Below are positions 7,295 to 54,916 of a stretch of 64,000 nt of DNA, in pieces (positions within the stretch are counted from its first letter, which is position 1; each line of letters opens with the position of its first letter). The DNA lies in the IMG/VR virus record IMGVR_UViG_3300028177_000001, positions 62,001 to 126,000 of that record. One strand, given 5' to 3'. Below the pieces are notes generated by a model. The model ran no database searches. It was given only the letters and a program-made list of their open reading frames with translations, and had not been told where the DNA came from. The position numbers were made by a program, and so were the translations under genes.

Positions 7295-8413
7295 TCAGAA
7301 GTGCTTGCTCACGTCCGGAGCCGACTCCCAGAGCTGCTCGAGCTGGTTGACCTCGGAGGAAGCCTCCTTGGTCACCGGGCCGCCGAGCTTCGCCGCGCCG
7401 ACGCTCGCCTTCTTGGGCTGCGGGCGGAGCTTCACGGCTGCTTCCTTGGCGGCGGGGGTCTCCTCGCCGTACAGGGAAGCCAGAACGGCCTGCTCGTCGC
7501 CGTCGAGCTCGGTGGCCAGAACGCCCATGGGGTCGTCCATGTCGCCGTCGAGCGAGACGTCGAAGTCGGGGAGGTCCATGAGGGCCATGGCCTCCTCGCC
7601 ACACGCCTCTTCGTCGCCCATGGCCTCTTCGCCGCAGGCCTCCTCAGCCTCCATGCCCTCTTCCGCGAGCATCTCCTCCTCGGGAGCCTCGTGGTGCATG
7701 CCCTCTTCCATGAGCATCTCCTCGAGCATGGCCTCCTCGTCGTCCATCATGCCCTCTTCCATGAGCATCTCCTCGAGCATGGCCTCTTCGTCCATGAACG
7801 CCTTCTTGGAGGACTCCTCTTCCTCGACGACCTCCTCCTCGACTTCCTCGGAGTCGTCGTCCTTGTCGTCCTCGTCGTCCTCGGCGAGGCGGATCAGGAT
7901 GCGCTCGATGCGGGCGATGCGAGCCTCGTTGGAGGCGATCTTGGCAGTCGCGGCCTTGTTCAGGGAAGCCTTCTTGGACTCCTCTTCCTCCATCTCCTCT
8001 TCCTCAACATCCTCGCCAAGGCGCTTCAGGCTGGCCTTGATGGAAGCGTCGGGGAGGTCCATGAGGGCCATGGCCTGGTCCTCGACTGCGGCGACCTTGG
8101 TCTCGTCACCCTCGGGATCACCCAGCATCGAGATGGCGATGCGGATGCACTGGGCGGCGCGGCGGTCGAGCGCAGCAGCCTTGTAGGCGGGGGAAGCGGG
8201 GCCCTCGTCGGGGGTGGCGGGGTGCTCACCGTTGGTGTAGGGACCGGGGTGAACATCTTCAGCCCAGCTGGAGGTGTCTCCGTTCTTGTAGTCATCCTGA
8301 CCGGGATCCACGCCGTCTCCTGCCGGAGATGCGGGGCCCTCGTCGGGGGTGGCGGGGTGGGCAGAAGCCTTGCGGGCCTCTTCGGCCCAGGTCATGCGCT
8401 GGCGGGTGGACAT
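7295..8413 (-). CDS. Prohead scaffolding/core protein
   Basis: Very acidic with internal repeats (HPATPDEGPASPA x2, DEEAMLEEMLMEEGM x2). Lies between the protease and the decoration/capsid genes. Confidence 0.65.
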   Translation of the reverse strand: MSTRQRMTWAEEARKASAHPATPDEGPASPAGDGVDPGQDDYKNGDTSSWAEDVHPGPYTNGEHPATPDEGPASPAYKAAALDRRAAQCIRIAISMLGDPEGDETKVAAVEDQAMALMDLPDASIKASLKRLGEDVEEEEMEEEESKKASLNKAATAKIASNEARIARIERILIRLAEDDEDDKDDDSEEVEEEVVEEEESSKKAFMDEEAMLEEMLMEEGMMDDEEAMLEEMLMEEGMHHEAPEEEMLAEEGMEAEEACGEEAMGDEEACGEEAMALMDLPDFDVSLDGDMDDPMGVLATELDGDEQAVLASLYGEETPAAKEAAVKLRPQPKKASVGAAKLGGPVTKEASSEVNQLEQLWESAPDVSKHF

Positions 8414-8424
8414 TTCGAACTCCT

Positions 8425-9930
8425 TCAGAGAGGGGGTGTCGGGTTGTTGTAGCCTTCCCAGAGGGAAAGCAGAGTGCCGACCCGGACAACAACCCGGAGT
8501 TCGGCAAGACTAAGATCTCTACCAAGGACCCGAGCGCACTTGCGCACGTAGCTCTGCTCTGAGCTGGAGCCCTTGATTCCGCCGTGTGCAAGCACGGCGC
8601 GGTACACTCGGGGGTCAACACGAACCCCGAACGTCTTGTTGGTGGCGGCGCACCCCTCTACGAGAGCGGCGTCCGAAGAGGCGACTCGCACCAGGTTCTT
8701 CAGGGTGCTGTTGTAGCGAGCCCCTGCCTCCCGGTTCATCTGGCTGCGATGCGCCTGCGAAGAAAGAGTAGGGGCTGGGCGAACCGAGACCCGAGCTTCC
8801 TTGTTGAGAGTGTCGTTGGGACCGTCGGAGGGAGCAATAGCCTTCGCGACTTCCTTCTCTCGCATCTCTTGTTCCAGGCGCTTCCGAACCCGGTCCTTGA
8901 CCCGGTCGTAGACCTCATCCTCGAGATCCTTGAAGGGCGGAGCTGCGGTCTCTGCGGCAGGGGCTTCTCCGCCCTCTTCCTTTTCGTCGTCCCCGCCGAA
9001 CTCAAAGGCGACCCGGCTGCGGGACTGACCCACCACCCCCATAGACGCAGCCTTTGCGATCGCAGAGTCGGACCAGGAAGGGCGGGGAGTGGAGAGGATC
9101 CTGCGGATCTCAGATTCCTGAGCTGCGACATCGCCCGTGCTCAGGATGTTACGCATCACCGCTCCGGTGAAGGCGGGGACCGCGACCCAGCTGGCCTCGA
9201 TGAAGTGCACACCACCCGTCTCGTCGTGGTCCACATGCCCGCAGAGCTCGGCAATAACACGGGTCTGACTGTTGTCGTCAATGAAGGTGTTCAGCTTCGC
9301 CGTCTTGACGTGATCGCAGAGGTCTGTCTCGTCGACGGCGTAGTGGCCGCACTTCGTACAGATTGTGAAGTCGGTGGTGCAGCCCATGGAGAGCGTGCCC
9401 ATCTTCTTCGAGCGGATGTCCGCGATCAGGCCTGTGTGCTTCAGGGAAGTGGCGACCAGGATATCGACGTAGACCGAATCTCCGATATCGCGAGCGACCG
9501 CATCGATGATGCGACCCTTCGACTTCTCCTCTACCTGCACGTGCTCCTGGAAGTTGTGGCCTCCGACGAAGGTCGGGTAGCTGGCCAGAAGCACCTGGCG
9601 AGACCAGGAGTCACCGTTGTTGTTGACGTACTGGGAGCTTTCGGGCTTGATGTGGTAGTCGGTGTAGCGGCGATCCACCGTGGCGGAGCCGACCTTGATC
9701 TTGCCCGGCTCAGCACCCGCGACCTTGTCGACGTCCACTGACGCCACAATGGTGCAATGAGTGAACAGCCACTGGTCCGGGTCCAGGGACCCACCCAGAA
9801 TCTCACGAGCCTGGTCGGAGAGGTTCTGCGTCGAAGCCCCTGAGGCGGCAACCCGACGAACACCGTCCCACCCGCGTCCCGTCACGCGGGGGTGTGTGAC
9901 CATGGCATTGGCTGTCTTGAGGTGTCCCAT
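8425..9930 (-). CDS. Prohead (maturation) protease, HK97/herpes-like serine protease with Cys-rich insert
   Basis: NNNGDSW, NFQEH..GRIIDA, LSMGC..CTKCG..CDH and FIEASWVAVPAF.GA motifs, plus synteny. Confidence 0.8.
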   Translation of the reverse strand: MGHLKTANAMVTHPRVTGRGWDGVRRVAASGASTQNLSDQAREILGGSLDPDQWLFTHCTIVASVDVDKVAGAEPGKIKVGSATVDRRYTDYHIKPESSQYVNNNGDSWSRQVLLASYPTFVGGHNFQEHVQVEEKSKGRIIDAVARDIGDSVYVDILVATSLKHTGLIADIRSKKMGTLSMGCTTDFTICTKCGHYAVDETDLCDHVKTAKLNTFIDDNSQTRVIAELCGHVDHDETGGVHFIEASWVAVPAFTGAVMRNILSTGDVAAQESEIRRILSTPRPSWSDSAIAKAASMGVVGQSRSRVAFEFGGDDEKEEGGEAPAAETAAPPFKDLEDEVYDRVKDRVRKRLEQEMREKEVAKAIAPSDGPNDTLNKEARVSVRPAPTLSSQAHRSQMNREAGARYNSTLKNLVRVASSDAALVEGCAATNKTFGVRVDPRVYRAVLAHGGIKGSSSEQSYVRKCARVLGRDLSLAELRVVVRVGTLLSLWEGYNNPTPPL

Positions 9931-9931
9931 G

Positions 9932-10486
9932 TTAGACCGTCACTTCCACTTCGACCTGGGGGGCTGAGGTGGGGTTGATAACGTCGGTGTCCTTGATCAG
10001 GAACATGCACTGAGGACAGCCCAAGAGCTTGTCGCTGGCCCCGCCACGCCGCTTGTAGATGGCCTTCTTGAGAGGGGGAGCGCCTTCACACCGAGGGCAA
10101 CAGGGACGACCCGAGTCACACTCGGACTTGTCCATCCGGTACTTGCGGTCTCGGGAGGCCCAGTACAACGCCTTGCGAGCGAATGCCTGGGCTACCCGAG
10201 AAGGAACCGGTCCGCCTGGGACGCTGACTGTCTCGGCGCCACCCGCACCCGTGTTGGTGTGGGTGGGGTTCGCCGACCCGTCGTTGTCCATCCTCTGAAG
10301 GTCCTCGACCGGGAAGCGACGGTTGCCCGTCGACATCTCCACATCAACCATGCCGATGGCGGGCCACACTGCTGTGACACGTCCGGCCTGGCTGTCGAAC
10401 ATACCGAACGGAACCACCACTCCCCCTACGGAGAACTCGGCAGCTTTCGCTTGGTAGTCGATGAAGTTGTCTGCTTCCCGCTTCAA
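9932..10486 (-). CDS. Head-associated protein with C-terminal zinc ribbon
   Basis: CPRC...CPQC. Carries the tag variant SRVAQAF. Confidence 0.6.
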   Translation of the reverse strand: MKREADNFIDYQAKAAEFSVGGVVVPFGMFDSQAGRVTAVWPAIGMVDVEMSTGNRRFPVEDLQRMDNDGSANPTHTNTGAGGAETVSVPGGPVPSRVAQAFARKALYWASRDRKYRMDKSECDSGRPCCPRCEGAPPLKKAIYKRRGGASDKLLGCPQCMFLIKDTDVINPTSAPQVEVEVTV

Positions 10487-10494
10487 GAGAGCCC

Positions 10495-11682
10495 CTACTG
10501 GAACAGGTTGAAGTGAACGGATGCCTTCTTGGAAGACTCTTCTTCCTCGACGACCTCTTCGACCTCTTCCTCAGCGGCTTCGCGGGGAAGCTGCGAGGAA
10601 GCGAGCTTGCCGCTCATGATGTCCTTGGCCACGCCCATGAACTCGCCGTGAACCTTCTCGACGGAGCGGCTGGAGCCTGCGACGATGCGGGCTGCGTTCT
10701 GCACCACCTGCACCATCTTGCGCCAGTTCTTCAGAAGGAGGCTCTGGAAGCGAGCGAGGAGATCGGCGAGACCGGCCACCTTCTCGGAAGCGGTGCGCAG
10801 GGCGCGATCTTCGAGCTCGAAGCCCTTGAAGGCGATCGCCATCGTCTTGTTGGTGTCGCGAAGAGCGTCCGTGGTCTCGTTGATGAACTCGGAGACCTCA
10901 GCACCGTACTTCTCGGAGATAGCGTTCATCAGCTCCTTCTGGACCTGCGTGGCGGTGCGCTTGCGCTCAACCACCTTGAGCATCGCCCGAGCCTCCACCA
11001 GAGCGGTCTTGCGCTCGATGGTGATGTTGCCGACCTCGGAGAGCTTGTCCTTGTACTCCTTCTTGATGCCCTCGTGCGCGGCCTTGAGCTCCTTGTCCAG
11101 ACCCGCCTTCGCTTCGAGAAGAGGCGCCACTGCGGCGTCGATCTGAGCCTGAAGCTCCATGGCCTCAGTGTTGAGTGCATCCAGGCGACGGATCTGGTCC
11201 GTGAACTGGTCGTAGCCCTGCACAGTGACGTTGGGCATGGCCGCCGACTTGCTGTCGCTGAAGTAGGTCTCGGCAGCGGTCAGGAGGGAAGCGAACTTGC
11301 CCAGACCTCCGGACTCCTGCAGATCACCCAGCTCGTGGAACTCGGCCTGCTGGAAGTGGTCCGACATGTAGCCCGCCTCGTCCGGCTCGCTCTCAAGCGG
11401 TCCGGTCTCAGGCTCGGCGATCTCGTTCGGGTCGAAGTCTGCCTTCTTGGAAGACTCCTCGACGACTTCCTCTTCCTCGACTTCCTCGGAAGCGGTGACC
11501 GGGAAGTTGAGGACCGCCCGATTCTCGACCGCGTCGGAAATCAGGTCGCTCCGATAGGCGAAGTCGATAGCGATCTTCGGATCGATACCAAGGATGTCGG
11601 CGTTCTGCTGGACTGTGTCGGCGATCTTGTCGATGGCCACGGTCAGTTCGCGAGCACCCCGACGGGTCAGCTTACTGGGCAT
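10495..11682 (-). CDS. Acidic coiled-coil head/core protein
   Basis: Likely start MPSK at 11682 after AGGAG. EEVEEE..SSKKA linkers are shared with the scaffold. Confidence 0.65.
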   Translation of the reverse strand: MPSKLTRRGARELTVAIDKIADTVQQNADILGIDPKIAIDFAYRSDLISDAVENRAVLNFPVTASEEVEEEEVVEESSKKADFDPNEIAEPETGPLESEPDEAGYMSDHFQQAEFHELGDLQESGGLGKFASLLTAAETYFSDSKSAAMPNVTVQGYDQFTDQIRRLDALNTEAMELQAQIDAAVAPLLEAKAGLDKELKAAHEGIKKEYKDKLSEVGNITIERKTALVEARAMLKVVERKRTATQVQKELMNAISEKYGAEVSEFINETTDALRDTNKTMAIAFKGFELEDRALRTASEKVAGLADLLARFQSLLLKNWRKMVQVVQNAARIVAGSSRSVEKVHGEFMGVAKDIMSGKLASSQLPREAAEEEVEEVVEEEESSKKASVHFNLFQ

Positions 11683-11749
11683 TGAAGTACTCCTGAAGAA
11701 GGAAAAGCTTGAGCGGGGCGGCAGGGCCGACACACTATCGGTGTTGTGT

Positions 11750-11764
11750 ATAAAGGAGTTACCG
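11750..11764 (-). promoter_or_regulatory. Putative late promoter
   Basis: cggt aactcctt tat upstream of the core-protease-scaffold operon. Confidence 0.7.
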
Positions 11765-11839
11765 CGAAAGACCCGCTTCTGCTGCGAGAGAAGCGAGCTT
11801 TGGCTTGTAGAGGATCGGTTTTAGCGGTCGGAGGGAAAA

Positions 11840-14800
11840 CTACCCCCAGGGGGCAAAGTCCCAGGTCAAAGCAACCTTCTTTGCAGGGCCCTGCGCGTGC
11901 GCGTCAGCTCCCGCCCTGTCATCGAAGTAGTCCACGTCGCCCGCAGGGTTCTTTGCCCCGTACTTGCCCTCGTCCGTCTTCCAGACCGTGCCCGCTGCAT
12001 GCTCTTCCTCAACCACCTCCTTCTCGGAGGGCTGCGGCGCGGGCTTCTTCTCGGCGGGGGGCGGGGCAGAAGTCGGCTTTGCGGGGGTCTTCTTGGAAGG
12101 AGTCTTCTTGATGTGCTTGCCCAGCGCCTGGAGAAGGGTGTCCACCCAGCTCTTCTGTTCCTTCACGTCCTTCGGGAACTCCTTCTGCTTCTTGCCCACC
12201 TGCGCTCGGGTCTTCTTTGCCTCGGCGTCATGCTCACCCACCTTCGCGCCTGGGCCGACCTTGCGGGTTGTCGCGGGGTCAAGGAAGGCAGTGTCCATCA
12301 CCAAGAAGTCGATCATCATCTCCTTCATCATGGCGTGGTCGTCGGCCGACATGTTCTTGTTCTTTTCTGGGTCCGACAGAAGCTCAGCGATGGGGTACGC
12401 CGGGTGGTCGTCCGAAACCAGACCCAGGAACTGCGATCCTGTGAGGTCATCGTAGACATCGCGGATGAAAGCCTGGTCATCCGAACCGAGGCTCTCGTCG
12501 CCCCCCAGGGTGCCGATGCTCAGGATCTTGCGCAAGTTGCCGCCCGCATCCGCAGCGCCGACGAGCCTCGCCATCGAAGAACCCACCCCCTGGGCATCCT
12601 TTCCGTCTTCCAGGGCCCCTGCTACGACCAGACCCCTCTGGATAGCCTCTATCTCGATGCGTCGAGGGTCACCTTCTTTGAGGTCTTCCATCTCGCGAGC
12701 CAGCTTGTCCAGATGGCGGACACGCCCGTCCTGGTCCATCTGGCGGTACTTGGCCACAGCCGTTTCGGCGCGGGCCACCGCTACATCCTGAGCTTTTCGA
12801 AGATCGCCCTCCGTGAGAGGAGCACCAGATTCGGAGAGAGGGTTGTCCGCGTCGACCATCGGGTTGTCGATCACCTTCTCGTAGTGCTCGACCTTAGCCA
12901 GGAACTCGGCCATCTTCTTCGGATTAGCATGAAGCTTCTCCCCGACATCCCCCGTGTCCTCCAGGTCCTCTTGCGCTTGCTTTGCGTCCTTGATGAACTC
13001 CGCCAGGTCTTCCGGCGCTGCGGCGGCCAGGGCCGTGCGCGCTGCGTCCAGGGTTTCCTTGAAGACGGCGTATTGCTCAGGCTTGAGATCATTAATGGCT
13101 CGGGAGACCGTACTCTCGGAGGTCTCGGAAAGCACGTTCACGACGTTGTCGATCAACTCGGTTTTTGCCTTGCTCTCAGCCTTCTCCCTTTTCACCTTGG
13201 CCTTCGCTTCAGCCTCGGCCTTCGCTTCAGCCTCGGCTTCAGCCTTCGCCGCGCCAGCCTTCTCGGCTTCCTCTTCCAGAAGCTCTACGGCTGCCTCAGC
13301 GTCGCTCTTGTCGGAAAGACCCTCGGTGACACCCTTGATTTCGTCCTCAGCCAGGCCCAGAGCCAGATAGCGGTCCATCAAGGACTTCTGGAAGTCCTCA
13401 AACTTCTTCGGGTCTGGGTCGTCGTCGGAGCCGGGCAGGTTGCTGGGGTCTGGCTTCGGAGGAACCTCCGCCTTGCCCCCGTCGTCCTTCGGAGAATCGC
13501 CTTCCGAAGCGTCTCCCTCCTCGAGAGACTCGTACTCACTGCCTCGGTCACGTAGGGTGTCCTCAGTGACCTCAGTGACCTGCCCTGTGTCCTTCTTCCG
13601 AACCCGAACCTTCTTAGTCTCCTCGGCCAGAAACCTCAAGGCGACCCGACGGGCCGAGGAGTCCTTGTAGTTCTGGGACCGGTCCTTCTTGTCCTGCTTC
13701 TCGTCCGGGTCCTGTTCCTCGTCCGTCTCTTTCACCTTGCGGGTCTGGAGGTCAGTACGAGGCGGCTTCTTGGTAGGGGACTGCTTGATGAGGTCCTCGG
13801 TTGCCTCGTCTTCCTTCTCAAGGCGGGTCTTCGTACTGAACAGAGTCCGCAAGGACTCATTGAACATCGGGTCGTTGATTGAGCCCTGGTCTCGCGAAGC
13901 CCAGCGCAAGGCGACCCGAAATGCAGACGCATGCATCTTCTTGCCCTTGTTCCGATCTTCCTGGACCCAGCGCCAGAACTGACCCACAGGCATAGTGAGG
14001 AACTCACCGTCCTTGAAGAAGCCGGGACGGTCGTACTGCTTCTTGTAGAGACCGATCGCCTCCTCGGGTGAGTCGAACCCGAGCATGACCTTGTCCTCGT
14101 CGAACTTTCCAGTCCCAGGGTCCTGCTGGTGGATGACGACGACCACCGAGGAGTCGTGGTTATCCCCCACGTACACGTCCAGCTTGTCCCCGTCAGTGCC
14201 CTCGGTCCCTCGGATCTCGCCGTAGTGGGCGTGCATCTTGATCGACCACTCGGTCCCGTCGGGTGCCTCGCCAGAGCGGGTGGCACCCTTCTTGTTCTCA
14301 ACGTCGATCTGGATGCCCTGGAAGTCAAGGTAGCCCTCGAACGGGAACTCCTTCCGCTTTGCCTGGGGGGGCTCCACCTTCACCGGGTGGTGGTTGTGGG
14401 GGGCCTCAATGATGTCTTGGTTGCTGGCAGCAGTACGTCGCTGCTCCTGGTAGACATAGTCCAGGTATCCCCCGTCGGGGTTAATCTGACGGAGGGTTCG
14501 CCCCTTCCGGATCTCCCCCAGATACCAGGCCCAGACTTCCGGGAACAGCTTGCTGTACGTGATCTTGATGGGGATATCCCGCCCCAAGATCTTCCCCGCC
14601 ATGGCTCGATGGTGACCGTCGGAGAAAGCCACCGTCCCGTCGCGGTGTACCAGAACCCCCACCGGCTCCGAGAAGTCCACGGTTTTCGCCCACTCGCGAG
14701 CTTCCCGAGATCGGGGGTTGAAGCCCCGCCACCACCCTGCCTGGTACTCCCCCACTCCGCTCTTCAGCTCTGACGCCGGGAACATCAGTCGCTGGCTCGC

Positions 14801-38232: not shown

Positions 38233-38246
38233 GACCTCTACGCGGG

Positions 38247-38261: not shown

Positions 38262-38266
38262 AAGCC

Positions 38267-39195: not shown

Positions 39196-39199
39196 GCGG

Positions 39200-40301: not shown

Positions 40302-40338
40302 GTCGAAGAGACTCCGTAGACGGTAGCTCTACCGTGGG

Positions 40339-40353
40339 ATAGTAGACCTACCG
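40339..40353 (-). promoter_or_regulatory. Putative late promoter (identical to the 38247 copy)
   Basis: cggt aggtctac tat. Confidence 0.7.
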
Positions 40354-41856: not shown

Positions 41857-41932
41857 AGGGTTCCTCCGTAGAAGAACCCTACCCCGGTCGAACCGCCTTA
41901 GCTACCCGGCTGTAGGCTTTTGTAAGCCGGGG

Positions 41933-47122: not shown

Positions 47123-47220
47123 GAGAGATCCTGTTCTTGCCTGAGCAAGGGGCTCAGTGAGGTACAAGCGCCGAAGATTTGACCACCGGGCACACCGGGG
47201 AATACTCTTGGGCTGGATCT

Positions 47221-47235
47221 ATAAACAGGACACCG
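47221..47235 (-). promoter_or_regulatory. Putative late promoter for the sheath gene
   Basis: cggt gtcctgtt tat. Confidence 0.7.
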
Positions 47236-47242
47236 GGGTGTT

Positions 47243-47707: not shown

Positions 47708-47735
47708 GAACTTCTCCGTGCCCACTCTACCCGCG

Positions 47736-47993
47736 CTACTCCCCCAGGGAGGAGAGCAGGTCGATGTACGAGAGATACTGCCCAGGCATGTCTGTGGGCG
47801 GGGCCACCTCCGCAGCATCGAACCGGCGCGCAAACAGAATGAAGAGCGCGGTGATGTCGGAGCCGGAGTAGCCTTCCTCCTGCAGTGTCTGTACAAACTG
47901 CAGGGTGTTGGCCGCGACAGCCTTCGACCAGAGAACGTCCGGGCCGAGGCTTCTAACGTAGACCGCCCACTCTTCGAGATTCTGCGGGTTCAT
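47736..47993 (-). CDS. Hypothetical protein
   Basis: 85-aa ORF coupled to the helicase stop. Confidence 0.55.
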   Translation of the reverse strand: MNPQNLEEWAVYVRSLGPDVLWSKAVAANTLQFVQTLQEEGYSGSDITALFILFARRFDAAEVAPPTDMPGQYLSYIDLLSSLGE

Positions 47994-50900: not shown

Positions 50901-51148
50901 GCCAGACGGTTCCGAGTAGCCTCCTGAGTGATCATGGAGTCGAGCTGGCTGGACGCCACTCGGAACTGCCGGTACAGACCAGACTCCTCGGAAACGAAGT
51001 CTGTCTCCTGGATGGCCTTCAGCTCTGAGTACAGCTCAAAGAACGCCTGCACACGGGGCGTTCTGCCGTAGGCTCGGGCCAGACTGCGCTGAGCCGTATT
51101 GGAGAGCGGCTGTAGAGCGTCGGAGACTTCAGGTGGCGACGGGGGCAT
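47993..51148 (-). CDS. SNF2-family SF2 helicase/ATPase with long N-terminal extension
   Basis: DTGMGKT, DEAH, LTASP, LGQNLQ, QRTARAWRSG. Confidence 0.85.
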   Translation of the reverse strand: MPPSPPEVSDALQPLSNTAQRSLARAYGRTPRVQAFFELYSELKAIQETDFVSEESGLYRQFRVASSQLDSMITQEATRNRLADKVKVIEPLLRRLDRRGRRPGAKSQVLPDALWKVLIDAYSDIIQGVAADKEIYLTQRRMPGTGTVRWWRLQRASPKEEKIEDLRRTDPDLYERTQESRRQRRVIMEKIKARIEADGLEPAVRRIMNRPMNVGIGPGGLMVYDTDGDVLTLPEFADKIKGKREVADNLTRVNPAQYMWAENLDFLRQYSKDDMDSVPGRAEYLALTDDPTKESALTRIYPVKVVEGKKVVSEGRFTGIPVSSLVNRVGRQIEGSSYSYNQQGRITRREIRKSDGKLDVRRTSEPYVTLDGDKFLIHIPMQRPFDHLRKLMKGHQEKYKDPDTGKRRTKTHRGLVQDIPTVNYVEKSRGTEYTFTARDFAIVQETLGGMALSHSAAKALRDYYDELSRAEQAAQAENLSRYSNDSLGFRDKPNLRIRGHVKQSLAWLDANDNKGICALDTGMGKTVVAIAAMMNLLKKGETGRFMYVTEGKLTGNLPKEAYKFLPRDSAAELMKQVDIVSYDQMIAARRKDPTYGDGYLAIYFDEAHTKLSKRSWVGYKAAVGMQSAHKVLLTASPMTRSPMEVLTMASVANGEDLNSPEGQLTARKFSERFSESVGGRIVGVTQDPSAARDLRVWVKRNLFFADKRDVEEEGAALALTGMGKSGRDIKREPVAVTMPPSIESAYRETMSEMLEALQEWSKFGSFKDNIPLGVEVSRNRLQVKRLLKRLSLLSDTPDQVLPGVGNPKLDHAMSLVRQALSGRTLLFTDSEQMAQDAFARLQRDLPAQGLVLGLSDRILYLSPSGEETRYGKRKGRNSYVDEKTGRKIDPDEWASHVLNKILGLGTKQRPDKPVCAAVLTGHYALGQNLQSFATVIHLDRDDWNAETMKQRTARAWRSGNKQEVSEYTLDMVYPDAVADDNADQTLDEIRSIVQEIDGKLFDEVVLESQIEKLGEEWIKIKKQRSQFHAVSRRMLERSLSPYASHLGEDEV

Positions 51149-52481
51149 CGTCGAGCTCTCGGATCCAGGAGGCCATGGTGACCTCGAAGCGGTTCAACGT
51201 AGAGAGCTCTGCGCCGCCAGGCTGGTCCGCGATCTCATCAGGCGTCGGAGGAGCCTTCAGAGCGTCCTGCACCGTCTCGGCTACAGGTAGGTCCAGGTTG
51301 TCCTCGTGCGCGGCGTCCTCGGCCACCTCGACGCTGTTGCTGACGGCCGAGGAGTCGGCGAACTCCCGCACTTCCCGCTTTTCAGGGTTGTCGAAGAAGT
51401 GGCCCTCGGCTGACGGGGCGCCAGAGCCGTAGTGTGGCGTGGGCATCTTCGAGGAGCGGACTTCATGGAAGTAGCTCTTCCCACCGTCCGGATGGATGAC
51501 GAACCCGTCCCGCCCCTCCCTGTGCATGCGAGCGACTTGGCGCTTCACCTGGCCCCAGTTTCGCACAGCCATCTCTTCTGTGTCGAGGACCCCATCAACC
51601 CGCGTGAAGCCCTTGACGACGTATTGGCCTGCGGCCCAGCGAGGATAGGGAGCTGGGCCCTTGTAGGGGCCGTCGTTGTTGGCAAGGGCTTCCTGGACGG
51701 CCCTCTCCAGCTTGGGCTTGGCCCAGGCCAAGAGCTTATCGAGGTTCTCTGTGCTCTGGCCGCCCCACTTGTAGGACTTGTGCCCGTAGGACTTCGGCCG
51801 GGAGAGTTTGCTGAACACATACCAGCTACGATCGTCCCCTCCTCGTCCTACGTTCCCCAGGTAGCCGTAGGACAGATTTGCCTCTGGGTACTTCCTCTTC
51901 AACCGGTCCACCAAGACCGCCAACTCCCGATCCGGAGTGGTGGAGGCAGTCTTCCCCGAGGGCTCGGCCAGAACCTGCTGCAGGAGATAGGTGTTCTCCT
52001 CGTGGGCGTTGGCGGCGGACATCAGCCAGTCATCCAGGCCCAGGGTCATTGCACCGATCTTCTTGATGCGGTCGTAGCCCGCCTTGATGGCGTCCTGGAG
52101 AGTGCTCTCCGAAAGAAGGCCGCGCTCATGCCGACAGGGCACCTGTTCCCAGTACTCGCAGAACCCCGTGATGTGCGGAAGCTGCGGACCCATGTCCACC
52201 GCGTCACGCCCCAGGTAGCCGACCATCTTCTCGGCGAGCTGGTCGATCTGCCCCTGGACCGAGTTGTAGAGTCTCTCGAACAGAAGGTGGTTCCCGTAGA
52301 AGGACGACCCCAGAGCTTGCCAGTGACTCACCTGATAGGAGAGACTCTGGGCCCGAAGAACGCAGAGCACCTCCAGCAGACAGAGGCGAACCTCCTCCCG
52401 CTGCATGGGAGTTGCGCTCAGGTACGCCTGCTTCTCGCGGGGGTCTACGGTCACCGGTTCTACTCCTGCCACTCCAGCCAT
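51129..52481 (-). CDS. Dps/ferritin-like domain fused to additional small domains
   Basis: SHWQALGSSFYGNHLLFERLY..IDQLAE matches the Dps ferroxidase signature. Confidence 0.7.
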   Translation of the reverse strand: MAGVAGVEPVTVDPREKQAYLSATPMQREEVRLCLLEVLCVLRAQSLSYQVSHWQALGSSFYGNHLLFERLYNSVQGQIDQLAEKMVGYLGRDAVDMGPQLPHITGFCEYWEQVPCRHERGLLSESTLQDAIKAGYDRIKKIGAMTLGLDDWLMSAANAHEENTYLLQQVLAEPSGKTASTTPDRELAVLVDRLKRKYPEANLSYGYLGNVGRGGDDRSWYVFSKLSRPKSYGHKSYKWGGQSTENLDKLLAWAKPKLERAVQEALANNDGPYKGPAPYPRWAAGQYVVKGFTRVDGVLDTEEMAVRNWGQVKRQVARMHREGRDGFVIHPDGGKSYFHEVRSSKMPTPHYGSGAPSAEGHFFDNPEKREVREFADSSAVSNSVEVAEDAAHEDNLDLPVAETVQDALKAPPTPDEIADQPGGAELSTLNRFEVTMASWIRELDDAPVAT

Positions 52482-54916
52482 TCGCTGACCGAGCTGGGGG
52501 TTGCGAAGCGAGAGCCTCTGGCAGCCAGGGATCCGGGGATGGCCCAGCTGTCGTTGTCTACCAGGACCACCTTGCCCCGGTTCTCCAGGCGCTGGAGCTC
52601 CTTGATAAGGGCATCGAGGTCCGACTGGGTGGGCTCGTCGGCTGAGATCTCGCGGAACACTTCCTCGGTGGTCAGCGGCTTGCGGGACCGGTTCTCCTGA
52701 AGGACGTACAGCAGGGCATGGCCCGCGACCTTCTGAGCCACCGTGTCCTGCATCTCGGAGTTGTCCTCCTGAGTGAAGTGGCCCTTCGGAGCACCGTCGC
52801 CTTCCACGGGACCCTTCTTGGTCTCGCCGATTTCGTCCTCAGTGTCCTTGGCGAGCTTCGCGAGCTCATCGGTGGACTCAGAGAGATCCTTCTGGGTGAA
52901 GTGACCTGCGGGGGCACCGTCCCCCTCCAGGGCACCAGAGGTCGGCTCGCCGATCTCCTCGGCGTCGAAGTCGGCGGCCTTCTTGTCGCCGTCGTCCTTC
53001 TTGGAAGCGGCTTCCTCCTTCTTCTTCTCGCAGTTGTCGCGCATGCCCCCCTCGGGGAGCTTCTCGCAACCGGCTTCCTTGTTCTCTCCAGCCCTGCGTC
53101 GGCCAGTGAGCTCCCGGTACTTGCCCCAGGCGAAGGCGGGGACCAGGTGGCCCATGTCCGCATCCTCGGCCTCGTCCCTCATAGCCTCGAATCCTTCCAC
53201 CCAGCCCTTCTTGTAGCCGGGGTCGTTCTCGAACCGCTTGTTCCAGCGGCCCTGGTAGCCGTCAAGTGCGCCCTGGCGCACTCCGCCTGAAGCCAGCCTC
53301 CCCTCCAAACCCTTTCGCTTGACCATCCCGCTCTCTTCGAGCTCGCTGAACCTACCGTCAGGGTAAACCCCCACCACGATCAATCCCCGAGGGAGATCCT
53401 GGTAGGCCATCACGGGGCCGTCCTCATCCTCCATGCGAGAGAAGAACTCGACCAACTTCTTAGACCTGGGGTCGTAGCTCCACACCCCCGGCTTCACGCG
53501 GGCTGCGGACTTGCCCAGAGGCCCGTCCGGGTAGCAACCCAGGAGCAGCTTGCTGTAGGCACACTTGCCCTGCTTGGAGTGCTGTCCGAGGAAGCCCGTG
53601 ATCTTCGCATACCGAGCGGTCCGTCGGGTGTGGAGGTCGGAGGCGACCTCACCGGCAAAGGCTCGGAAGTCTGCGCACACGGTGAGACCGAGACGGGCAG
53701 TCTTGGCCGGGTGCCCGTACAGGCCCTTGGCCTGCTTCTCAGAAGCATGCCGCATGGACTTAGAAGCATCGTACTTCTGGCTGGCATCCGACACGAACTC
53801 CAAGCTGGGCCCCTCTTCCCGGAACTCTACGACAACGTACTCTGACCGCCCGTCGTGCCCACTGTCATAAACCCGACCTCCGTGGGTTTCGATGAGATCC
53901 TCGATTCCCCAGAGCTGCCTGGTCGAGGTGTACCGAACGGTGACCCTGAACGAGCGAGCAATCTTCTCCGAAGCAGCTTCCTTCGGGGTCTCGGAGGCCA
54001 CCTTGGGTCCGATCTCCTTCATCGCAGCCAGGAGAAGCTTCGCCGAGGAGGACCGAGCTCGCTTCGAGTGGGCGACCAGGAACGGGGCGACACCTGCGTC
54101 CTTCTTGTATGCAGTCTTCACCAGGGACAGGGCTCGCTTCTGGAGCTTGCGGACCGAAGCCTCGACATCGCTCTGGGTCTGCTTGGTGAAGCCGTACAGG
54201 CCAGACGCTGCCTCCCTCGTCCAGGAGAGACGAGCTCGCTGGGCGGCCATGATCTCTACAGGAAGAAGGGGGCCATCCTTGCTCATCATCGACTCTTCCA
54301 TCTCCTGCTTCAGCTTCTCAACTGCAGGGGGAGGGTTCTCGACGTTGTCCTGGAGTTCCTGGGGCAGGTCGCTGAGGGGAACACTCTCGCCCTGGGCAAA
54401 CATCGCCTCTTCGGCGAGCTCGTTCTGGAGCACCACGTCGTCGACGTAGGACGGGGTGGCCTTCTTCAGCTTGTTGCCCATCTTGTTGAAGCCCGCGTCG
54501 TCCGGGTGCTTGTCCCGGTTGGCGATGGACTGAGCCTGGGCGAGACTAACCGTGCCCTGGTACTCCCAGGCATCCTCTTCCCACCCGTCCAGGTTCAGGT
54601 AGTAGAGCTCGCCGCTCTTCCACCAGTAGTCATGCATTTCGTCGGCGGAATCAAGCTTCTGGAATCCCAGGCGTTCCCAGCCCCTGTCGTCCTCAGGCGG
54701 GAACCGCCCAGCTTGCTTGTGCTTGTCCTTGACTACGTCGCCGTACTCCTCGTTCATCTTCTGCCAGGAGTCCTGGGTCTCCTTGGGCTGGGTCTTCATC
54801 CAGGCCTCGAACTGCTTGCGTCCCTCAGGCCCCTCAAGGAAGCGGGCGTGGACACTGCGGAGCTCGGTTTCGAGAGCAGCCTGGCGAGCGATTTCGGAAG
54901 GAAGAAGCAGAAGCAT
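52460..54916 (-). CDS. Mosaic head protein with numerous [KR]xA linkers and internal duplications
   Basis: GLYG..HSK...KLLL x2 and EIGE...G..EGDGAP.GHFTQ x2. Preceded by the late motif. Confidence 0.6.
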   Translation of the reverse strand: MLLLLPSEIARQAALETELRSVHARFLEGPEGRKQFEAWMKTQPKETQDSWQKMNEEYGDVVKDKHKQAGRFPPEDDRGWERLGFQKLDSADEMHDYWWKSGELYYLNLDGWEEDAWEYQGTVSLAQAQSIANRDKHPDDAGFNKMGNKLKKATPSYVDDVVLQNELAEEAMFAQGESVPLSDLPQELQDNVENPPPAVEKLKQEMEESMMSKDGPLLPVEIMAAQRARLSWTREAASGLYGFTKQTQSDVEASVRKLQKRALSLVKTAYKKDAGVAPFLVAHSKRARSSSAKLLLAAMKEIGPKVASETPKEAASEKIARSFRVTVRYTSTRQLWGIEDLIETHGGRVYDSGHDGRSEYVVVEFREEGPSLEFVSDASQKYDASKSMRHASEKQAKGLYGHPAKTARLGLTVCADFRAFAGEVASDLHTRRTARYAKITGFLGQHSKQGKCAYSKLLLGCYPDGPLGKSAARVKPGVWSYDPRSKKLVEFFSRMEDEDGPVMAYQDLPRGLIVVGVYPDGRFSELEESGMVKRKGLEGRLASGGVRQGALDGYQGRWNKRFENDPGYKKGWVEGFEAMRDEAEDADMGHLVPAFAWGKYRELTGRRRAGENKEAGCEKLPEGGMRDNCEKKKEEAASKKDDGDKKAADFDAEEIGEPTSGALEGDGAPAGHFTQKDLSESTDELAKLAKDTEDEIGETKKGPVEGDGAPKGHFTQEDNSEMQDTVAQKVAGHALLYVLQENRSRKPLTTEEVFREISADEPTQSDLDALIKELQRLENRGKVVLVDNDSWAIPGSLAARGSRFATPSSVSEWLEWQE

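What the first reader, a model, noticed from the sequence alone, without database searches (positions are those of the whole stretch)
7295..54916. [KR]-x-A linkers at domain boundaries: polyproteins probably cut by the prohead protease
Seen: KTA, KKA, KQA, KEA, RTA, KIA and RxA recur exactly where domains change. In the 2130-aa protein: GRTA|CIIAA, FKKA|AS, VKTA|AF, SKTA|SQ, RRTA|AS. In the 919-aa protein: PKQA|S, VKIA|RS, VRMA|AE. In the Dps fusion: EKQA|Y, GKTA|S. The 818-aa protein has more than ten, and the scaffold, the 396-aa core protein and the protease itself (LKTA|N, AKAA|S) carry them too. Cleavage at RTA| would expose the Cys that an Ntn-hydrolase needs at its N-terminus. Known: T4 gp21 and phiKZ gp175 process many head proteins at a short motif ending in Glu. 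Inference: this protease cuts after Ala with Lys/Arg at P3, turning giant ORFs into separate enzymes inside the head, a viral-polyprotein strategy in a phage.
Basis: partly seen in the sequence, partly recalled or inferred. Interest (0 to 1): 0.8.

Follow-up and report, generated by a model that had tools for sequence, protein, structure and literature searches.

The report
Phage head protease cut-site motif
A short Lys/Arg-x-Ala signature marks where a jumbo phage's head-maturation protease very probably cuts its scaffold, itself and giant multi-enzyme cargo proteins, so these giant phage proteins would be true polyproteins; no protein experiment has tested this yet.

Summary
The quoted peptides are all present, and the motif is not chance. 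In an unbiased scan of all 400 a-x-b patterns, K-x-A ranks 1st and R-x-A 3rd in the head-internal proteins; neither is enriched in the other 31 proteins of the window. Reversed, re-spaced and substituted controls are flat. The same scan recovers the known L/I-x-E motif from the T4 scaffold. It puts K-x-A first in three other lineages with this protease family: Tunturi_5, phage G and Mycobacterium phage Alice. The giant enzymes carry no excess of sites overall, but the sites sit at module borders. Among representative polyproteins, [KR]xA lies exactly before the pyrophosphatase module in 15/19 and just after the topoisomerase IB module in 100/127. ORF splits and fusions in relatives fall on the same sites. 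The Ntn-hydrolase nucleophile Cys is directly preceded by [KR]xA in about 34 of 36 homologs, including Cys 1235 of a 2792-aa protein. A distant phage group has L-x-E before the Cys instead. The protease model has a prohead-protease/assemblin-like fold. Best reading: a prohead protease that cuts [KR]-x-A↓(S/A) and processes polyproteins. All cleavage is inferred. Sites are not enriched in predicted disordered stretches.

The parts
8425..9930 (-). Prohead protease, 501 aa. Catalytic domain is about residues 40-290, followed by a roughly 200-aa helical C-terminal extension.
   Evidence: PHROG head maturation protease, E 1.4e-8. Sits between the portal/cargo genes and the scaffold/MCP genes. AF2 model pLDDT 91.8. 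Foldseek: 143 viral hits with E<=1e-3, many named prohead protease; the best PDB hits are herpesvirus proteases.
9541..9543 (-). His130, candidate catalytic histidine
   Evidence: Invariant in 68 homologs. The catalytic role is inferred.
9388..9390 (-). Ser181 in LSMGC, candidate catalytic serine
   Evidence: At least 90% conserved. hhalign places it on the GMSVGF serine of HK97 gp4, but that alignment is not significant.
9910..9918 (-). Protease N-terminal site K5-T-A7|N
   Evidence: M-x-F-x-[KR]-x-A is nearly universal in about 68 protease homologs, and present in Tunturi_5 and phage G.
9046..9054 (-). Protease site K293-A-A295|S just after the catalytic domain, in the position of a release site
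   Evidence: K293 and A295 are invariant in 9 orthologs. K-[AV]-A|S follows the domain in nearly all of 68 homologs, and the short 285-aa forms end 2-4 residues after it.
7295..8413 (-). Scaffold-like acidic protein, 372 aa, with 15 [KR]xA sites
   Evidence: 15 vs 4.6 expected (z 5.6). Every ortholog is enriched (z 2.5-10) and the reversed control is flat. Alignment.
7361..7369 (-). Scaffold site K349-E-A351|S, 21 residues from the conserved C-terminal tail LWESAPDVSxxF, in the position of a herpesvirus M site
   Evidence: Motif kept in 10/10 orthologs. Tunturi_5 gp332 has KVA|S about 20 aa from its C-terminus.
7406..7414 (-). Scaffold site PQPKKA|S
   Evidence: Kept in 8/10 orthologs.
10495..11733 (-).
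   Evidence: 14 vs 6.2 expected. A 60-nt module is shared with the scaffold gene. Homologs start M..K[RK][GK]A|A.
9932..10486 (-). 184-aa conserved head protein; MKREA|DNF at its N-terminus and SRVA|QAF at residue 97
   Evidence: In L022/L011 it is fused behind another module, and the junction reads KVA|ENF. Site 97 is kept in 7/8 orthologs.
11840..18232 (-). 2130-aa cargo polyprotein. Order: Cys-Ntn hydrolase (18-297), unknown modules, TopoIB (about 603-866), Zn-ribbon module, InPase (1269-1438), C-terminal modules.
   Evidence: Pfam Topoisom_I and InPase. AAT E 0.004. Atlas and homologs carry PF03417. The modules recur in proteins of 272-3381 aa.
18182..18190 (-). R15-T-A17|C18: end of the leader, directly before the Ntn nucleophile Cys
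   Evidence: [KR]xA directly precedes the Cys in about 34 of 36 clade homologs, including internal Cys 85, 195 and 1235. A distant group has L-L-E, I-T-E, I-N-E or L-N-E there.
17342..17350 (-). K295-K-A297|A: C-border of the Ntn domain
   Evidence: Stand-alone homologs stop here. All 12 extended homologs and 8 of 11 have [KR]xA at this junction.
15626..15634 (-). R867-V-A869|E: C-border of the TopoIB module
   Evidence: 100/127 representatives have [KR]xA within -2..+18 of the module end, against 0.27 expected (p 8e-34). Control: 48/127.
15080..15088 (-). K1049-T-A1051|AFD: start of the Zn-ribbon module
   Evidence: The same KTA|AFD / RTA|AYDF plus HCP.C module follows TopoIB directly in P0069 and P0083.
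14429..14437 (-). R1266-T-A1268|A: N-border of the InPase module
   Evidence: [KR]xA lies exactly at this aligned position in 15/19 representatives with unrelated upstream sequence (expected 0.015, p 1e-24). Control: 0/19.
13910..13918 (-). R1439-V-A1441|L: C-border of the InPase module
   Evidence: The median end of module homology is residue 1439. 13/19 have a site within -6..+20, but the control Ax[KR] is also 13/19, so this border is weak.
18229..20988 (-). 919-aa cargo polyprotein. Order: leader, Zn-finger-like N-domain, CCA/poly(A) nucleotidyltransferase, HAD phosphatase, 2H phosphoesterase.
   Evidence: Pfam PolyA_pol, PolyA_pol_RNAbd, HAD_SAK_1, 2_5_RNA_ligase2.
20959..20967 (-). N-terminal leader MIQPSAS-R8-V-A10|
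   Evidence: The same start, MIQPSPSRVA, heads an unrelated 209-aa ORF of L005. 37 of 138 representatives have R[VI]A in the first 25 residues.
20743..20751 (-). K80-Q-A82|S: border before the nucleotidyltransferase module
   Evidence: In L005 and L008 the homologous module opens an ORF with a short leader ending KQA|E.
19426..19434 (-). K519-I-A521|R: border between nucleotidyltransferase and HAD modules
   Evidence: In L013 the two modules are separate ORFs. The second ORF starts MRPKVA|KSY at exactly this position.
18832..18840 (-). R717-M-A719|A: border between HAD and 2H modules
   Evidence: HAD homology ends at 745 and 2H homology starts at 723-750. The border is only approximate.
20985..23312 (-). 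775-aa head-internal protein with 31 sites
   Evidence: 31 vs 14.2 expected. Orthologs z 4.1-5.8.
52460..54916 (-). 818-aa protein with 26 sites; contains a KKA|ADFD segment paralogous to the 412-aa protein
   Evidence: 26 vs 11.7 expected. BLAST of 412-aa residues 96-137 against 818-aa residues 646-683.
51129..52481 (-). 450-aa Dps-like fusion; KQA|Y at residue 17 and KTA|S at residue 177
   Evidence: DUF5856 and PHROG DNA-binding/Dps-like hits at residues 35-101. Stand-alone DUF5856 proteins are 121 aa. Borders were not tested further.

Best explanation
The window is the head module of an uncultured jumbo phage (IMG/VR contig of 288 kb).

The protease. The 501-aa ORF at 8425-9930 is a divergent prohead serine protease with an assemblin-like fold. 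Its recognition motif is [K/R]-x-A, and the scissile bond lies after the Ala. Ser or Ala is preferred at P1'; Val, Thr, Lys and Gln are common at P2.

Proposed mechanism (every step inferred). The scaffold, the core proteins, the protease (carried in by its C-terminal extension) and the cargo proteins co-assemble inside the shell of the 290-aa MCP. The protease then becomes active and makes four kinds of cut:
1. It trims itself at K5-T-A7 and at K293-A-A295|S, which sits just after the catalytic domain.
2. It cuts the scaffold and the 412-, 775- and 818-aa proteins at 14-31 sites each. One cut falls 21 residues before the conserved scaffold tail.
3. It removes short N-terminal leaders, often M-x-P-S-x-x-R-V-A-x-R-Y...[KR]-x-A.
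4. It cuts the 2130-aa and 919-aa cargo proteins at exposed module junctions.

Predicted products. These cuts would release an Ntn hydrolase whose Cys18 becomes residue 1, a topoisomerase IB, a pyrophosphatase, a CCA/poly(A) nucleotidyltransferase, a HAD phosphatase and a 2H phosphoesterase. All are presumed to be ejected with the DNA. Sites buried inside folded domains are probably not cut.
For: Specificity of the signal.
- K-x-A ranks 1st and R-x-A 3rd of 400 patterns in head-internal proteins. In the other proteins of the window K-x-A ranks 379th and R-x-A is at expectation.
- Pooled count 102 vs 45.4 (z 9.6), with seven controls flat. [KR]xAS is 18 vs 3.1. Ser at P1' is 28 vs 10.7.

Method control. 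The same scan returns L-x-E and I-x-E as ranks 1 and 2 for the T4 gp22 scaffold.

Link to the protease family.
- K-x-A is rank 1 in Tunturi_5 gp328+gp332, phage G gp19-21 and Alice gp90. Tail proteins show none.
- Every scaffold, protease and 775-aa ortholog is enriched. MCP and decoration proteins are not.

Self-sites. M-x-F-x-[KR]-x-A at the N-terminus and K-[AV]-A|S after the domain occur in about 68 homologs.

Borders.
- InPase N-border 15/19, p 1e-24. TopoIB C-border 100/127, p 8e-34. TopoIB N-border 93/118.
- ORF splits and fusions fall on the sites.
- All 12 extended Ntn homologs have a site where stand-alone forms stop.

Register of the cut and internal cutting.
- [KR]xA directly precedes the Ntn Cys, with leaders as short as M-x-[KR]-x-A.
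- It also precedes internal Cys 85, 195 and 1235.
- Homologs in a phage group without this protease have L-L-E, I-T-E, I-N-E or L-N-E before the Cys, and neighbouring genes there start M..I-N-E|A (no Chryseobacterium hit).

Fold. pLDDT 91.8. BFVD hits are prohead proteases. The top PDB hits are herpesvirus proteases, which by established knowledge cut (V/L/I)-x-A|S.

Context. Virion proteins of PaBG, whose protease is a structural neighbour, run as multiple bands (PMC7412058).
Against: There are no protein-level data for any member.

- The total site count in the giant ORFs is at expectation.
- The long predicted disordered stretches of the 2130-aa protein hold almost no sites.
- The N-border of the window's own TopoIB module has no site.
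- About 20-40% of module borders in relatives lack one.
- The control motif is also raised at two borders.
- Column-exact conservation across orthologs is weak overall (p 0.05).
- Representatives are related, so the p-values overstate independence.
- Ntn hydrolases can self-process.
- The protease of the x-x-E group was not identified.
- The protease matches no Pfam peptidase family, and hhalign to HK97 gp4 and T4 gp21 is not significant.
- Packaging of the giant ORFs in the head rests on gene position and leaders only.
Confidence: 0.68

Rival explanations
1. The protease does cut at [KR]-x-A, but only in the scaffold and core proteins, in itself, and at N-terminal leaders, as in T4 and SPN3US. 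The motifs at internal junctions of the giant ORFs are leftovers of leaders from genes that became fused. The giant proteins stay whole or nearly whole in the virion.
For: - In SPN3US, apart from the protease's self-cleavage, all identified cleavages produce N-terminal propeptides (PMC10052503).
- Overall site density in the giant ORFs is at expectation.
- The window's TopoIB N-border carries a decayed version of the motif (NASAAFKSKK).
- Some borders in relatives lack a site.
- The N4 vRNAP polyvalent protein is packaged unprocessed (PMC5512222).
Against: - Internal junction motifs are kept as a pattern (K or R, any P2, Ala) while residues just upstream are unrelated. InPase shows this in 15/19, only one of which is N-terminal. 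That argues for selection in the internal context.
- An Ntn nucleophile at residue 85, 195 or 1235 needs an endoproteolytic cut at that very junction.
Confidence: 0.18
2. [KR]-x-A, and especially the longer S-A-x-R-V-A-x-R-Y-L signature, is a docking or capsid-targeting signal and is not cut. It would bind the scaffold, shell or portal so that each module is packaged.
For: - The RVA signature is an extended motif of about 11 residues, found at N-termini and junctions, like the T4 capsid-targeting sequence.
- It also occurs at C-termini of stand-alone modules, for example L022 TopoIB and the window's 314-aa ORF.
Against: - Minimal leaders M-x-[KR]-x-A|C carry no RVA signature yet keep the triplet directly before a residue that must become N-terminal.
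- 14-31 copies per scaffold or core protein fit degradation better than docking.
- The triplet frames the protease domain itself.
- The two roles can coexist: targeting first, then cleavage, as for T4 internal proteins.
Confidence: 0.08
3. Another agent does the cutting. The Ntn domain processes itself, and a host or second phage protease, or none at all, acts at the other sites. The association with this prohead protease is coincidental.
For: - Cys-Ntn hydrolases of the AAT/CBAH type are known to self-process (established knowledge).
- Phage G also packages ClpP/ClpX (PMC12484599).
Against: - The same triplet flanks unrelated modules that have no self-processing chemistry.
- It is top-ranked in four lineages that share this protease family and little else.
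- It is conserved at the protease's own termini.
- The residue triplet before the Ntn Cys changes to x-x-E in a phage group without this protease.
Confidence: 0.04
4. The motif is a by-product of composition or low complexity in Lys/Ala/Glu-rich helical proteins, or a DNA-level repeat, and has no function.
For: - The motif is short and Ala is common.
- Part of the scaffold signal comes from a repeated 60-nt acidic+SSKKA module.
Against: - Reversed and re-spaced controls have the same local composition and are flat.
- The signal is absent from 31 other proteins.
- Placement is position-exact at borders.
- P2 and K/R vary, so the conservation is at the level of the protein pattern.
Confidence: 0.02

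Closest known systems
T4 gp21, phiKZ gp175 and SPN3US gp245 prohead proteases
   Same: A head-module serine protease processes itself, degrades the scaffold at many sites and removes propeptides from internal or ejection proteins at a three-residue motif whose last residue is P1. The T4 motif is recovered by the same scan used here.
   Different: Those enzymes cut after Glu (L/I-x-E or S/A/G-x-E). Here P1 is Ala and P3 is Lys/Arg. There is no detectable sequence relation. In SPN3US, cargo cleavages remove N-terminal propeptides only. Here the junctions between enzyme modules carry the motif.
Herpesvirus assemblin (MEROPS S21) with its R and M sites
   Same: These are the best solved-structure matches of the protease model. 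They share Ala at P1 and a preference for Ser at P1'. One site lies right after the catalytic domain (K293-A-A|S, compare the R site) and one about 20 residues before the scaffold C-terminus (K349-E-A|S, compare the M site; site architecture in PMC2949831). The assemblin consensus (V/L/I)-x-A|S is from my own knowledge.
   Different: P3 is basic here, not hydrophobic. Protease and scaffold are separate genes. TM-scores are only 0.36-0.43 and Foldseek E is 0.02. A Cys4 Zn-ribbon is inserted in the catalytic domain. There are dozens of substrates, including enzymes.
Polyvalent proteins of phages and conjugative elements (Iyer et al. 2017, PMC5512222)
   Same: Giant multi-domain proteins encoded next to virion genes, with shuffled effector and repair domains (InPase and 2H are named there as phage-type domains). 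They are proposed to be packaged and injected, and the analogy to RNA-virus polyproteins is drawn there.
   Different: That work proposes release by an embedded zincin-like MPTase or a C-terminal assemblin-like peptidase domain and gives no cleavage motif. Here Pfam reported no peptidase-family hit in the giant ORFs. A separately encoded prohead protease and a defined junction motif are proposed instead.
[quoted passage not shown] 2021, PMC7824862)
   Same: Probably the same protease clade. It is predicted there to be the head-processing peptidase of jumbo phages that lack an S77 enzyme. Phage G gp19 is the top structural neighbour here.
   Different: No substrates or specificity were described. 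Identity with their exemplar (AYD81192.1) was not tested here.
T4 capsid-targeting sequence of internal proteins
   Same: A short N-terminal leader shared by unrelated cargo proteins that ends at a protease site, for example MIQPSASRVA| and M-x-PSA-x-RVA-x-x-Y-L...[KR]xA|C.
   Different: The sequence is different. Here the leader also occurs internally at module junctions and sometimes at C-termini. A targeting function was not tested.
Cys-Ntn hydrolase zymogens (AAT/C45, CBAH/C59)
   Same: A conserved nucleophile Cys must become the N-terminal residue after a leader is removed.
   Different: Classical members self-process. Here the leader ends in the phage's maturation-protease motif, and that ending changes between phage groups, which suggests activation in trans inside the head.

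Membership tests
Prohead (capsid maturation) serine proteases, clan SH / assemblin-like fold | Gene lies in the head module between the portal and the scaffold/major capsid protein genes | tested here: met
   Portal 27818-29527, protease 8425-9930, scaffold 7295-8413, MCP 5490-6362. The order is the same in 20 related loci and in Tunturi_5.
Prohead (capsid maturation) serine proteases, clan SH / assemblin-like fold | Assemblin-like/HK97 gp4-like fold | tested here: met
   AF2 model from a 68-sequence alignment: pLDDT 91.8, pTM 0.84. BFVD: 143 hits with E<=1e-3, including many named 'prohead (serine) protease' or COG3740. PDB: herpesvirus proteases dominate the top hits, but weakly (prob 0.97, E 0.02, TM 0.36-0.43).
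Prohead (capsid maturation) serine proteases, clan SH / assemblin-like fold | Conserved catalytic His and Ser | tested here: inconclusive
   His130 is invariant and Ser181 (LSMGC) is at least 90% conserved in 68 homologs. The spacing of 51 residues is similar to HK97 gp4 as I recall it (His65/Ser114), and a non-significant hhalign puts Ser181 on the HK97 GMSVGF serine. The geometry of the model's active site was not inspected.
Prohead (capsid maturation) serine proteases, clan SH / assemblin-like fold | Sequence membership of a curated family (Pfam S77, S78/U35, S21) | tested here: not met
   No Pfam hit on the window protein or on 9 orthologs. None is precomputed on the listed homologs (120 of 306 hits). 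No PDB hit by sequence or profile. hhalign to HK97 gp4 and T4 gp21 has probability 0.2. Only PHROG 18299 matches.
Prohead (capsid maturation) serine proteases, clan SH / assemblin-like fold | Demonstrated cleavage of head proteins | not testable with these tools
   No proteomic data for this clade were found.
Assemblin-type specificity, (V/L/I)-x-A|S | Ala at P1 | tested here: met
   This is an inference only. The triplet ends directly before the Ntn Cys in about 34 of 36 homologs.
Assemblin-type specificity, (V/L/I)-x-A|S | Ser at P1' | tested here: inconclusive
   Ser is enriched (28 vs 10.7; [KR]xAS 18 vs 3.1). At module borders, however, P1' is often A, K, C, G or N.
Assemblin-type specificity, (V/L/I)-x-A|S | Hydrophobic P3 | tested here: not met
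   P3 is Lys or Arg. V/L/I-x-A are not among the top patterns.
T4 gp21 / phiKZ gp175 type specificity (x-x-E|) | Glu at P1 | tested here: not met
   No x-x-E pattern ranks among the enriched ones in the head proteins. L-x-E and I-x-E are recovered only in the T4 control.
Polyvalent proteins (Iyer et al. 2017) | Several unrelated effector or repair domains in one polypeptide, encoded among virion or late genes | tested here: met
   Ntn hydrolase + TopoIB + InPase in the 2130-aa ORF, and nucleotidyltransferase + HAD + 2H in the 919-aa ORF, both between portal and protease. The modules recur in shuffled order in proteins of 272-3381 aa.
Polyvalent proteins (Iyer et al. 2017) | Embedded peptidase (MPTase or C-terminal assemblin-like domain) proposed to release the domains | tested here: not met
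   Pfam scans of the whole ORFs and of eight pieces found no peptidase-family hit. The protease is a separate gene here. It is fused to large proteins in Alice gp90 and L021.
Cys-Ntn hydrolases (AAT PF03417 / CBAH PF02275) | Family profile match and fold | tested here: met
   PF03417 E 0.004, below the curated cut-off, on the window piece. PF03417 is precomputed on 14 of 67 homologs. Atlas feature score is 0.98, with structural neighbours in C45/AAT and CBAH.
Cys-Ntn hydrolases (AAT PF03417 / CBAH PF02275) | Conserved nucleophile Cys that becomes residue 1 after leader removal | tested here: inconclusive
   Cys18 is at least 90% conserved and always follows a leader of 1 to about 40 residues or an upstream module. 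Removal of the leader, and by what agent, cannot be tested here.

The most novel reading that the evidence does not exclude
A large, mostly uncultured clade of jumbo and huge phages (phage G, Tunturi_5, cluster C mycobacteriophages and hundreds of metagenomic relatives) uses a divergent assemblin-like protease with herpesvirus-like Ala|Ser chemistry and a basic P3. This protease acts as a general processing enzyme. It converts shuffled 'polyvalent' giant ORFs into sets of separate enzymes inside the capsid. It also works as a zymogen activator, so an Ntn hydrolase gains its catalytic N-terminal Cys only after head maturation. [KR]-x-A junctions would then be the grammar that lets cargo modules be shuffled freely between genes.
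Probability: 0.55. Interest if true: 0.82.

Novelty: new variant of a known kind. Interest (0 to 1): 0.72.

Why it matters
- **New specificity and a reusable method.** It would give a large, poorly understood group of giant phages its first cleavage specificity. The same simple sequence scan can be applied to any phage head module.
- **Polyvalent proteins become testable.** The idea that polyvalent proteins work like viral polyproteins would become a testable map of junctions and products. For this window the products are a topoisomerase IB, a pyrophosphatase, a tRNA/RNA-repair set and an Ntn hydrolase, delivered with the DNA.
- **Better annotation.** It shows where giant ORFs should be split. 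It also shows which start codons are right: the database call for the 2130-aa ORF omits the leader and the catalytic Cys.
- **A link to herpesviruses.** Phage and herpesvirus maturation proteases would share their cut-site chemistry as well as their fold.
- **Tractable experiments.** Cultured relatives exist, so a single virion N-terminomics experiment could settle it.

Tried and rejected
**Protease identity**
- The first AF2 run used only 9 orthologs. It gave pLDDT 51, and its Foldseek hits were meaningless. A 68-sequence alignment replaced it.
Those rows were dropped.
- PDB sequence and profile searches, Pfam, and hhalign to HK97 gp4 and T4 gp21 gave nothing significant.

**Tests of the motif that were weak or negative**
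- Column-exact conservation in ortholog alignments is weak, because motif copies turn over in low-complexity regions. Per-ortholog counts are the better measure.

**Dead ends in the databases**
- Megablast of the region against GenBank phages found nothing.
- Two further walks along the 52.7-kb contig found, plus one 40-kb stretch of Chryseobacterium phage MA9V-1, did not reveal the protease of the phage group with x-x-E|Cys. That covariation therefore remains suggestive.
- The PaBG proteins reported as multi-band could not be matched to locus tags in one call, and this line was dropped.

**Literature**
- The phage G structure paper (PMC7316594) is not held.
- The searches that looked for it found no description of a K/R-x-A phage cleavage motif.

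**Explanations rejected**
- A lipobox or signal-peptidase reading of RTA|C, because there is no hydrophobic signal segment.
- Pure composition, because the controls are flat.

Full report
**What the window is.**
All long genes lie on the - strand and GC is 62%. Terminase (30451-32394), portal (27818-29527), major capsid protein (5490-6362) and a head maturation protease (8425-9930) are recognised by PHROGs. Between portal and protease lie a 775-aa ORF, a 919-aa ORF and a 2130-aa ORF, followed by 412-aa and 184-aa ORFs.
- The 919-aa ORF has PolyA_pol/CCA nucleotidyltransferase, HAD_SAK_1 and 2H phosphoesterase domains.
- The 2130-aa ORF has TopoIB and InPase domains.
- After the protease comes an acidic 372-aa scaffold-like ORF.

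The window is identical to part of a 288-kb IMG/VR contig. Twenty related viral contigs carry the protease at 42-61% identity. The nearest GenBank relatives of the protease are an uncultured 485-kb phage, the cultured jumbo myovirus Tunturi_5, phage G gp19 and cluster C mycobacteriophages.

Against composition-preserving shuffles, [KR]xA is two- to three-fold over-represented in these proteins:

| Protein | Observed | Expected |
|---|---|---|
| Scaffold | 15 | 4.6 |
| 412-aa | 14 | 6.2 |
| 775-aa | 31 | 14.2 |
| 818-aa | 26 | 11.7 |
| Protease | 11 | 6.3 |
| 2130-aa (not enriched) | 35 | 32.3 |
| 919-aa (not enriched) | 13 | 10.4 |

In the 11 head-internal proteins K-x-A ranks 1st (90 vs 51, z 5.9) and R-x-A 3rd (z 4.1). 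In the other 31 proteins K-x-A ranks 379th and R-x-A is at expectation.

For the scaffold/core/protease set, [KR]xA is 102 vs 45.4 (z 9.6). The controls Ax[KR], [KR]A, A[KR], [KR]xxA, [KR]xxxA, [KR]xG, [KR]xS and [DE]xA are all at expectation. [KR]xAS is 18 vs 3.1. Ser is enriched at the next position (28 vs 10.7), and Val and Thr in the middle position. The reversed control has the same local composition, so low complexity does not explain the signal.

**Does the scan find real cleavage motifs, and does the motif follow the protease?**
Applied to the T4 scaffold gp22, the scan returns L-x-E and I-x-E as ranks 1 and 2. That is the established gp21 motif.

Applied to head proteins of three other lineages with this protease family, it returns K-x-A as rank 1 each time:
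- Tunturi_5 gp328+gp332: 35 vs 14.4, z 6.0.
- Phage G gp19-21: 16 vs 6.0.
- The protease-fusion gp90 of Mycobacterium phage Alice: 19 vs 8.8.

In Tunturi_5 the sheath, tail and capsid proteins show nothing. Every scaffold ortholog (z 2.5-10), protease ortholog (z 2.2-3.7, except the intein-containing L021 form at z 0.8) and 775-aa ortholog (z 4.1-5.8) in the related loci is enriched. MCP and decoration proteins are not.

**The protease carries the motif at its own ends.**
In 9 orthologs, M1, A7, K293 and A295 are invariant. In about 68 homologs at 38-65% identity, plus Tunturi_5 gp331 and phage G gp19, almost all start M-x-F-x-[KR]-x-A, and almost all have K-[AV]-A|S a few residues after the catalytic domain. 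The short 285-aa forms end 2-4 residues after it. This is the layout expected for self-processing.

The scaffold has a site kept in 10/10 orthologs, 21 residues before a conserved C-terminal tail. Tunturi_5 has the same arrangement.

**What the protease is.**
It matches no Pfam peptidase family, no PDB sequence, and neither HK97 gp4 nor T4 gp21 significantly.

A first model from 9 sequences was useless. With 68 sequences the catalytic domain modelled at pLDDT 91.8.
- Against predicted viral structures it has 143 hits with E<=1e-3. Phage G gp19 leads, followed by proteins of Gordonia phage Pupper, phiRSL1 and PaBG. Many further hits are named prohead protease or COG3740.
- Against the PDB, herpesvirus proteases dominate the top hits, but weakly.
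- His130 is invariant and Ser181 nearly so. A Cys4 Zn-ribbon is inserted in the domain.

Iyer et al. [quoted passage not shown] From my own knowledge, assemblins cut (V/L/I)-x-A|S at a release site after the protease domain and at a maturation site near the scaffold C-terminus. The layout here is parallel, except that P3 is basic.

**Are the giant ORFs cut at junctions?**
Overall counts cannot tell, because a handful of junction sites is lost among folded-domain residues. I therefore defined borders independently of the motif.

1. *ORF splits and fusions in relatives.*
   - In L013 the nucleotidyltransferase and HAD modules are separate ORFs. The second starts MRPKVA|KSY exactly where the window's 919-aa protein has KIA|RSY (residue 519).
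   - In L005 and L008 the nucleotidyltransferase module opens an ORF after a leader ending KQA|, matching KQA|S at residue 80.
   - The 184-aa protein (MKREA|DNF) is fused behind another module in L022, and the junction reads KVA|ENF.
2. *Representative polyproteins.* An exhaustive search with residues 260-1459 of the 2130-aa protein found 14,711 relatives. The best 150 are proteins of 272-3381 aa that carry the TopoIB or InPase module at any position.
   - Module homology to the InPase begins at a median of residue 1266 and ends at 1439. Both are [KR]xA sites.
   - [KR]xA sits exactly before the InPase module in 15/19 representatives whose upstream sequences are unrelated (expected 0.015, p 1e-24; reversed control 0/19).
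   - It sits within -2..+18 of the TopoIB end in 100/127 (expected 0.27, p 8e-34; control 48/127).
   - It sits at the TopoIB start in 93/118.
   - These p-values overstate independence, because the sequences are related. However, only the K/R...A pattern is kept, while P2 and everything upstream vary.
3. *Negative points.*
   - The window's own TopoIB N-border has only a decayed motif.
   - The InPase C-border is no better than its control.
   - 20-40% of borders in relatives lack a site.
   - A crude disorder scale puts the long disordered stretches of the 2130-aa protein elsewhere.

**The Ntn hydrolase fixes the register of the cut.**
Residues 18-297 of the 2130-aa protein are a Cys-Ntn hydrolase of the AAT/CBAH kind. 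Such enzymes need their nucleophile Cys as residue 1.
- In 24 of 25 clade homologs sampled, and in 10 of 11 representative polyproteins, the Cys is directly preceded by [KR]-x-A. Examples are TREA|C, SKQA|C, LRKA|C and PRVA|C.
- Leaders can be as short as MNKTA|C or MSREA|C.
- The other two homologs have K-T-S.
- The domain is internal in P0085 (Cys85), P0099 (Cys195) and P0074 (Cys1235 of 2792 aa, preceded by PSAARVA...GKTA|C), so an endoproteolytic cut inside a giant protein is required there.
- Where homologs extend beyond the domain, all 12 of the first set and 8 of 11 of the second have [KR]xA where stand-alone forms stop. This matches KKA|AS at residue 295.
- In a distant branch of the family the Cys follows L-L-E, I-T-E, I-N-E or L-N-E, or just Met. 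This branch comprises Chryseobacterium jumbo phages MA9V-1/-2 and relatives, which gave no hit to this protease. Neighbouring MA9V-1 genes begin MSNYINE|A and MNFNKNE|A.
- That is the Glu-type signature of T4-like and phiKZ-like proteases. It suggests that the leader ending co-varies with the phage's maturation protease. I could not find that group's protease, so this step is suggestive only.

**A second signature.**
R-V-A is the most over-represented triplet in the polyproteins (298 vs 76). It sits in a longer motif, [AP]-S-A-x-R-V-A-[AS]-R-[YWF]-L.
- It opens many ORFs (MIQPSASRVA..., MSHSAIRVAARYQ...).
- It lies in the Ntn leaders upstream of the final [KR]xA|C.
- It recurs at junctions and at some C-termini.

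It may be a preferred cleavage site, a capsid-targeting leader like that of the T4 internal proteins, or both. This is open.

**Comparison with what is known.**
- Maturation by a prohead protease at a three-residue motif is classical for T4, phiKZ and SPN3US.
- Giant shuffled 'polyvalent proteins' near virion genes, including InPase and 2H domains, were described by Iyer et al. 2017. They drew the analogy to RNA-virus polyproteins but proposed release by embedded MPTase or assemblin-like domains, and gave no cut site.
- PaBG, whose protease is a structural neighbour, has virion proteins that run as multiple bands.
- None of the papers found describes a K/R-x-A motif, module-junction sites, or activation of an Ntn enzyme by a head protease. 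Nine searches were run; eight looked for a cleavage motif or proteolytic processing, and only located the Tunturi paper.

I therefore rate this a new variant of a known kind.

**Verdict.**

| Claim | My estimate |
|---|---|
| [KR]-x-A is this protease family's recognition motif | about 0.8 |
| Cleavage occurs at least at some internal junctions of the giant ORFs | about 0.6 |

All cleavage events, the packaging of the giant ORFs and the catalytic residues are inferred. A single virion N-terminomics experiment on Tunturi_5, phage G or a cluster C mycobacteriophage would decide.

Noticed in passing
L021:9968-12877 (IMGVR_UViG_3300013121_000030); proteins P0230, P0268: Some homologs of the protease carry an intein/Hint insert inside the Zn-ribbon of the catalytic domain. 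This makes a 969-aa ORF. PF05203, PF14890 and PF13403 are precomputed on two database homologs.
   Followed up: partly
window 41807-47182 (+) and 41933-47167 (-): Two overlapping giant ORFs (1791 and 1744 aa) lie on opposite strands. The - strand one fits the gene orientation of the window and is very poor in Lys and Arg.
   Followed up: no
window 7800-7859, 7965-8024, 10523-10582, 11438-11497: A 60-nt module encoding an acidic run followed by SSKKA is repeated within the scaffold gene and in the 412-aa gene, at up to 82% DNA identity. The peptide VVEEEESSKKA is identical in both proteins.
   Followed up: partly
window 37099-38232 (residue 112), 34041-35042 (residue 77), 47993-51148 (residue 63): The RVA-type signature (for example LLASSARVASRYAA and SPERLAARYAQK) also occurs in proteins outside the head block, including an SNF2-type helicase. 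These may be packaged cargo too.
   Followed up: no
window 18143-18232 (start of the 2130-aa ORF); protein P0068: The public gene call for this ORF is 2100 aa and starts 30 codons downstream. It therefore omits the leader and the Ntn nucleophile Cys18, both of which are conserved in homologs.
   Followed up: yes
window 5490-6362 and loci L003-L022: The 290-aa major capsid protein has no delta domain. It stays 73-95% identical (84-95% in all but the most divergent locus, L021) in relatives whose protease, scaffold and cargo proteins are only 35-60% identical.
   Followed up: no
window 9316-9381 (protease residues 184-205): A Cys4 (plus His) zinc-ribbon is inserted in the catalytic domain right after the candidate catalytic Ser181. 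It is conserved in all homologs.
   Followed up: partly
L027:6851-11386 (Mycobacterium phage Alice gp90): In cluster C mycobacteriophages the protease domain is the N-terminus of a 1511-aa protein rich in K-x-A sites. The protease is itself part of a polyprotein-like ORF that is annotated as hypothetical.
   Followed up: partly
window 11840-20988; representatives P0069-P0217: Relatives of residues 260-1459 of the 2130-aa ORF number 824 at E<=1e-30. Of the best 150, 132 carry the topoisomerase IB module, at any position in proteins of 272-3381 aa. This suggests a virion-delivered TopoIB is common in this phage group. The 919-aa ORF combines a CCA-type nucleotidyltransferase, a HAD phosphatase and a 2H phosphoesterase, which looks like an RNA-repair set.
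   Followed up: partly
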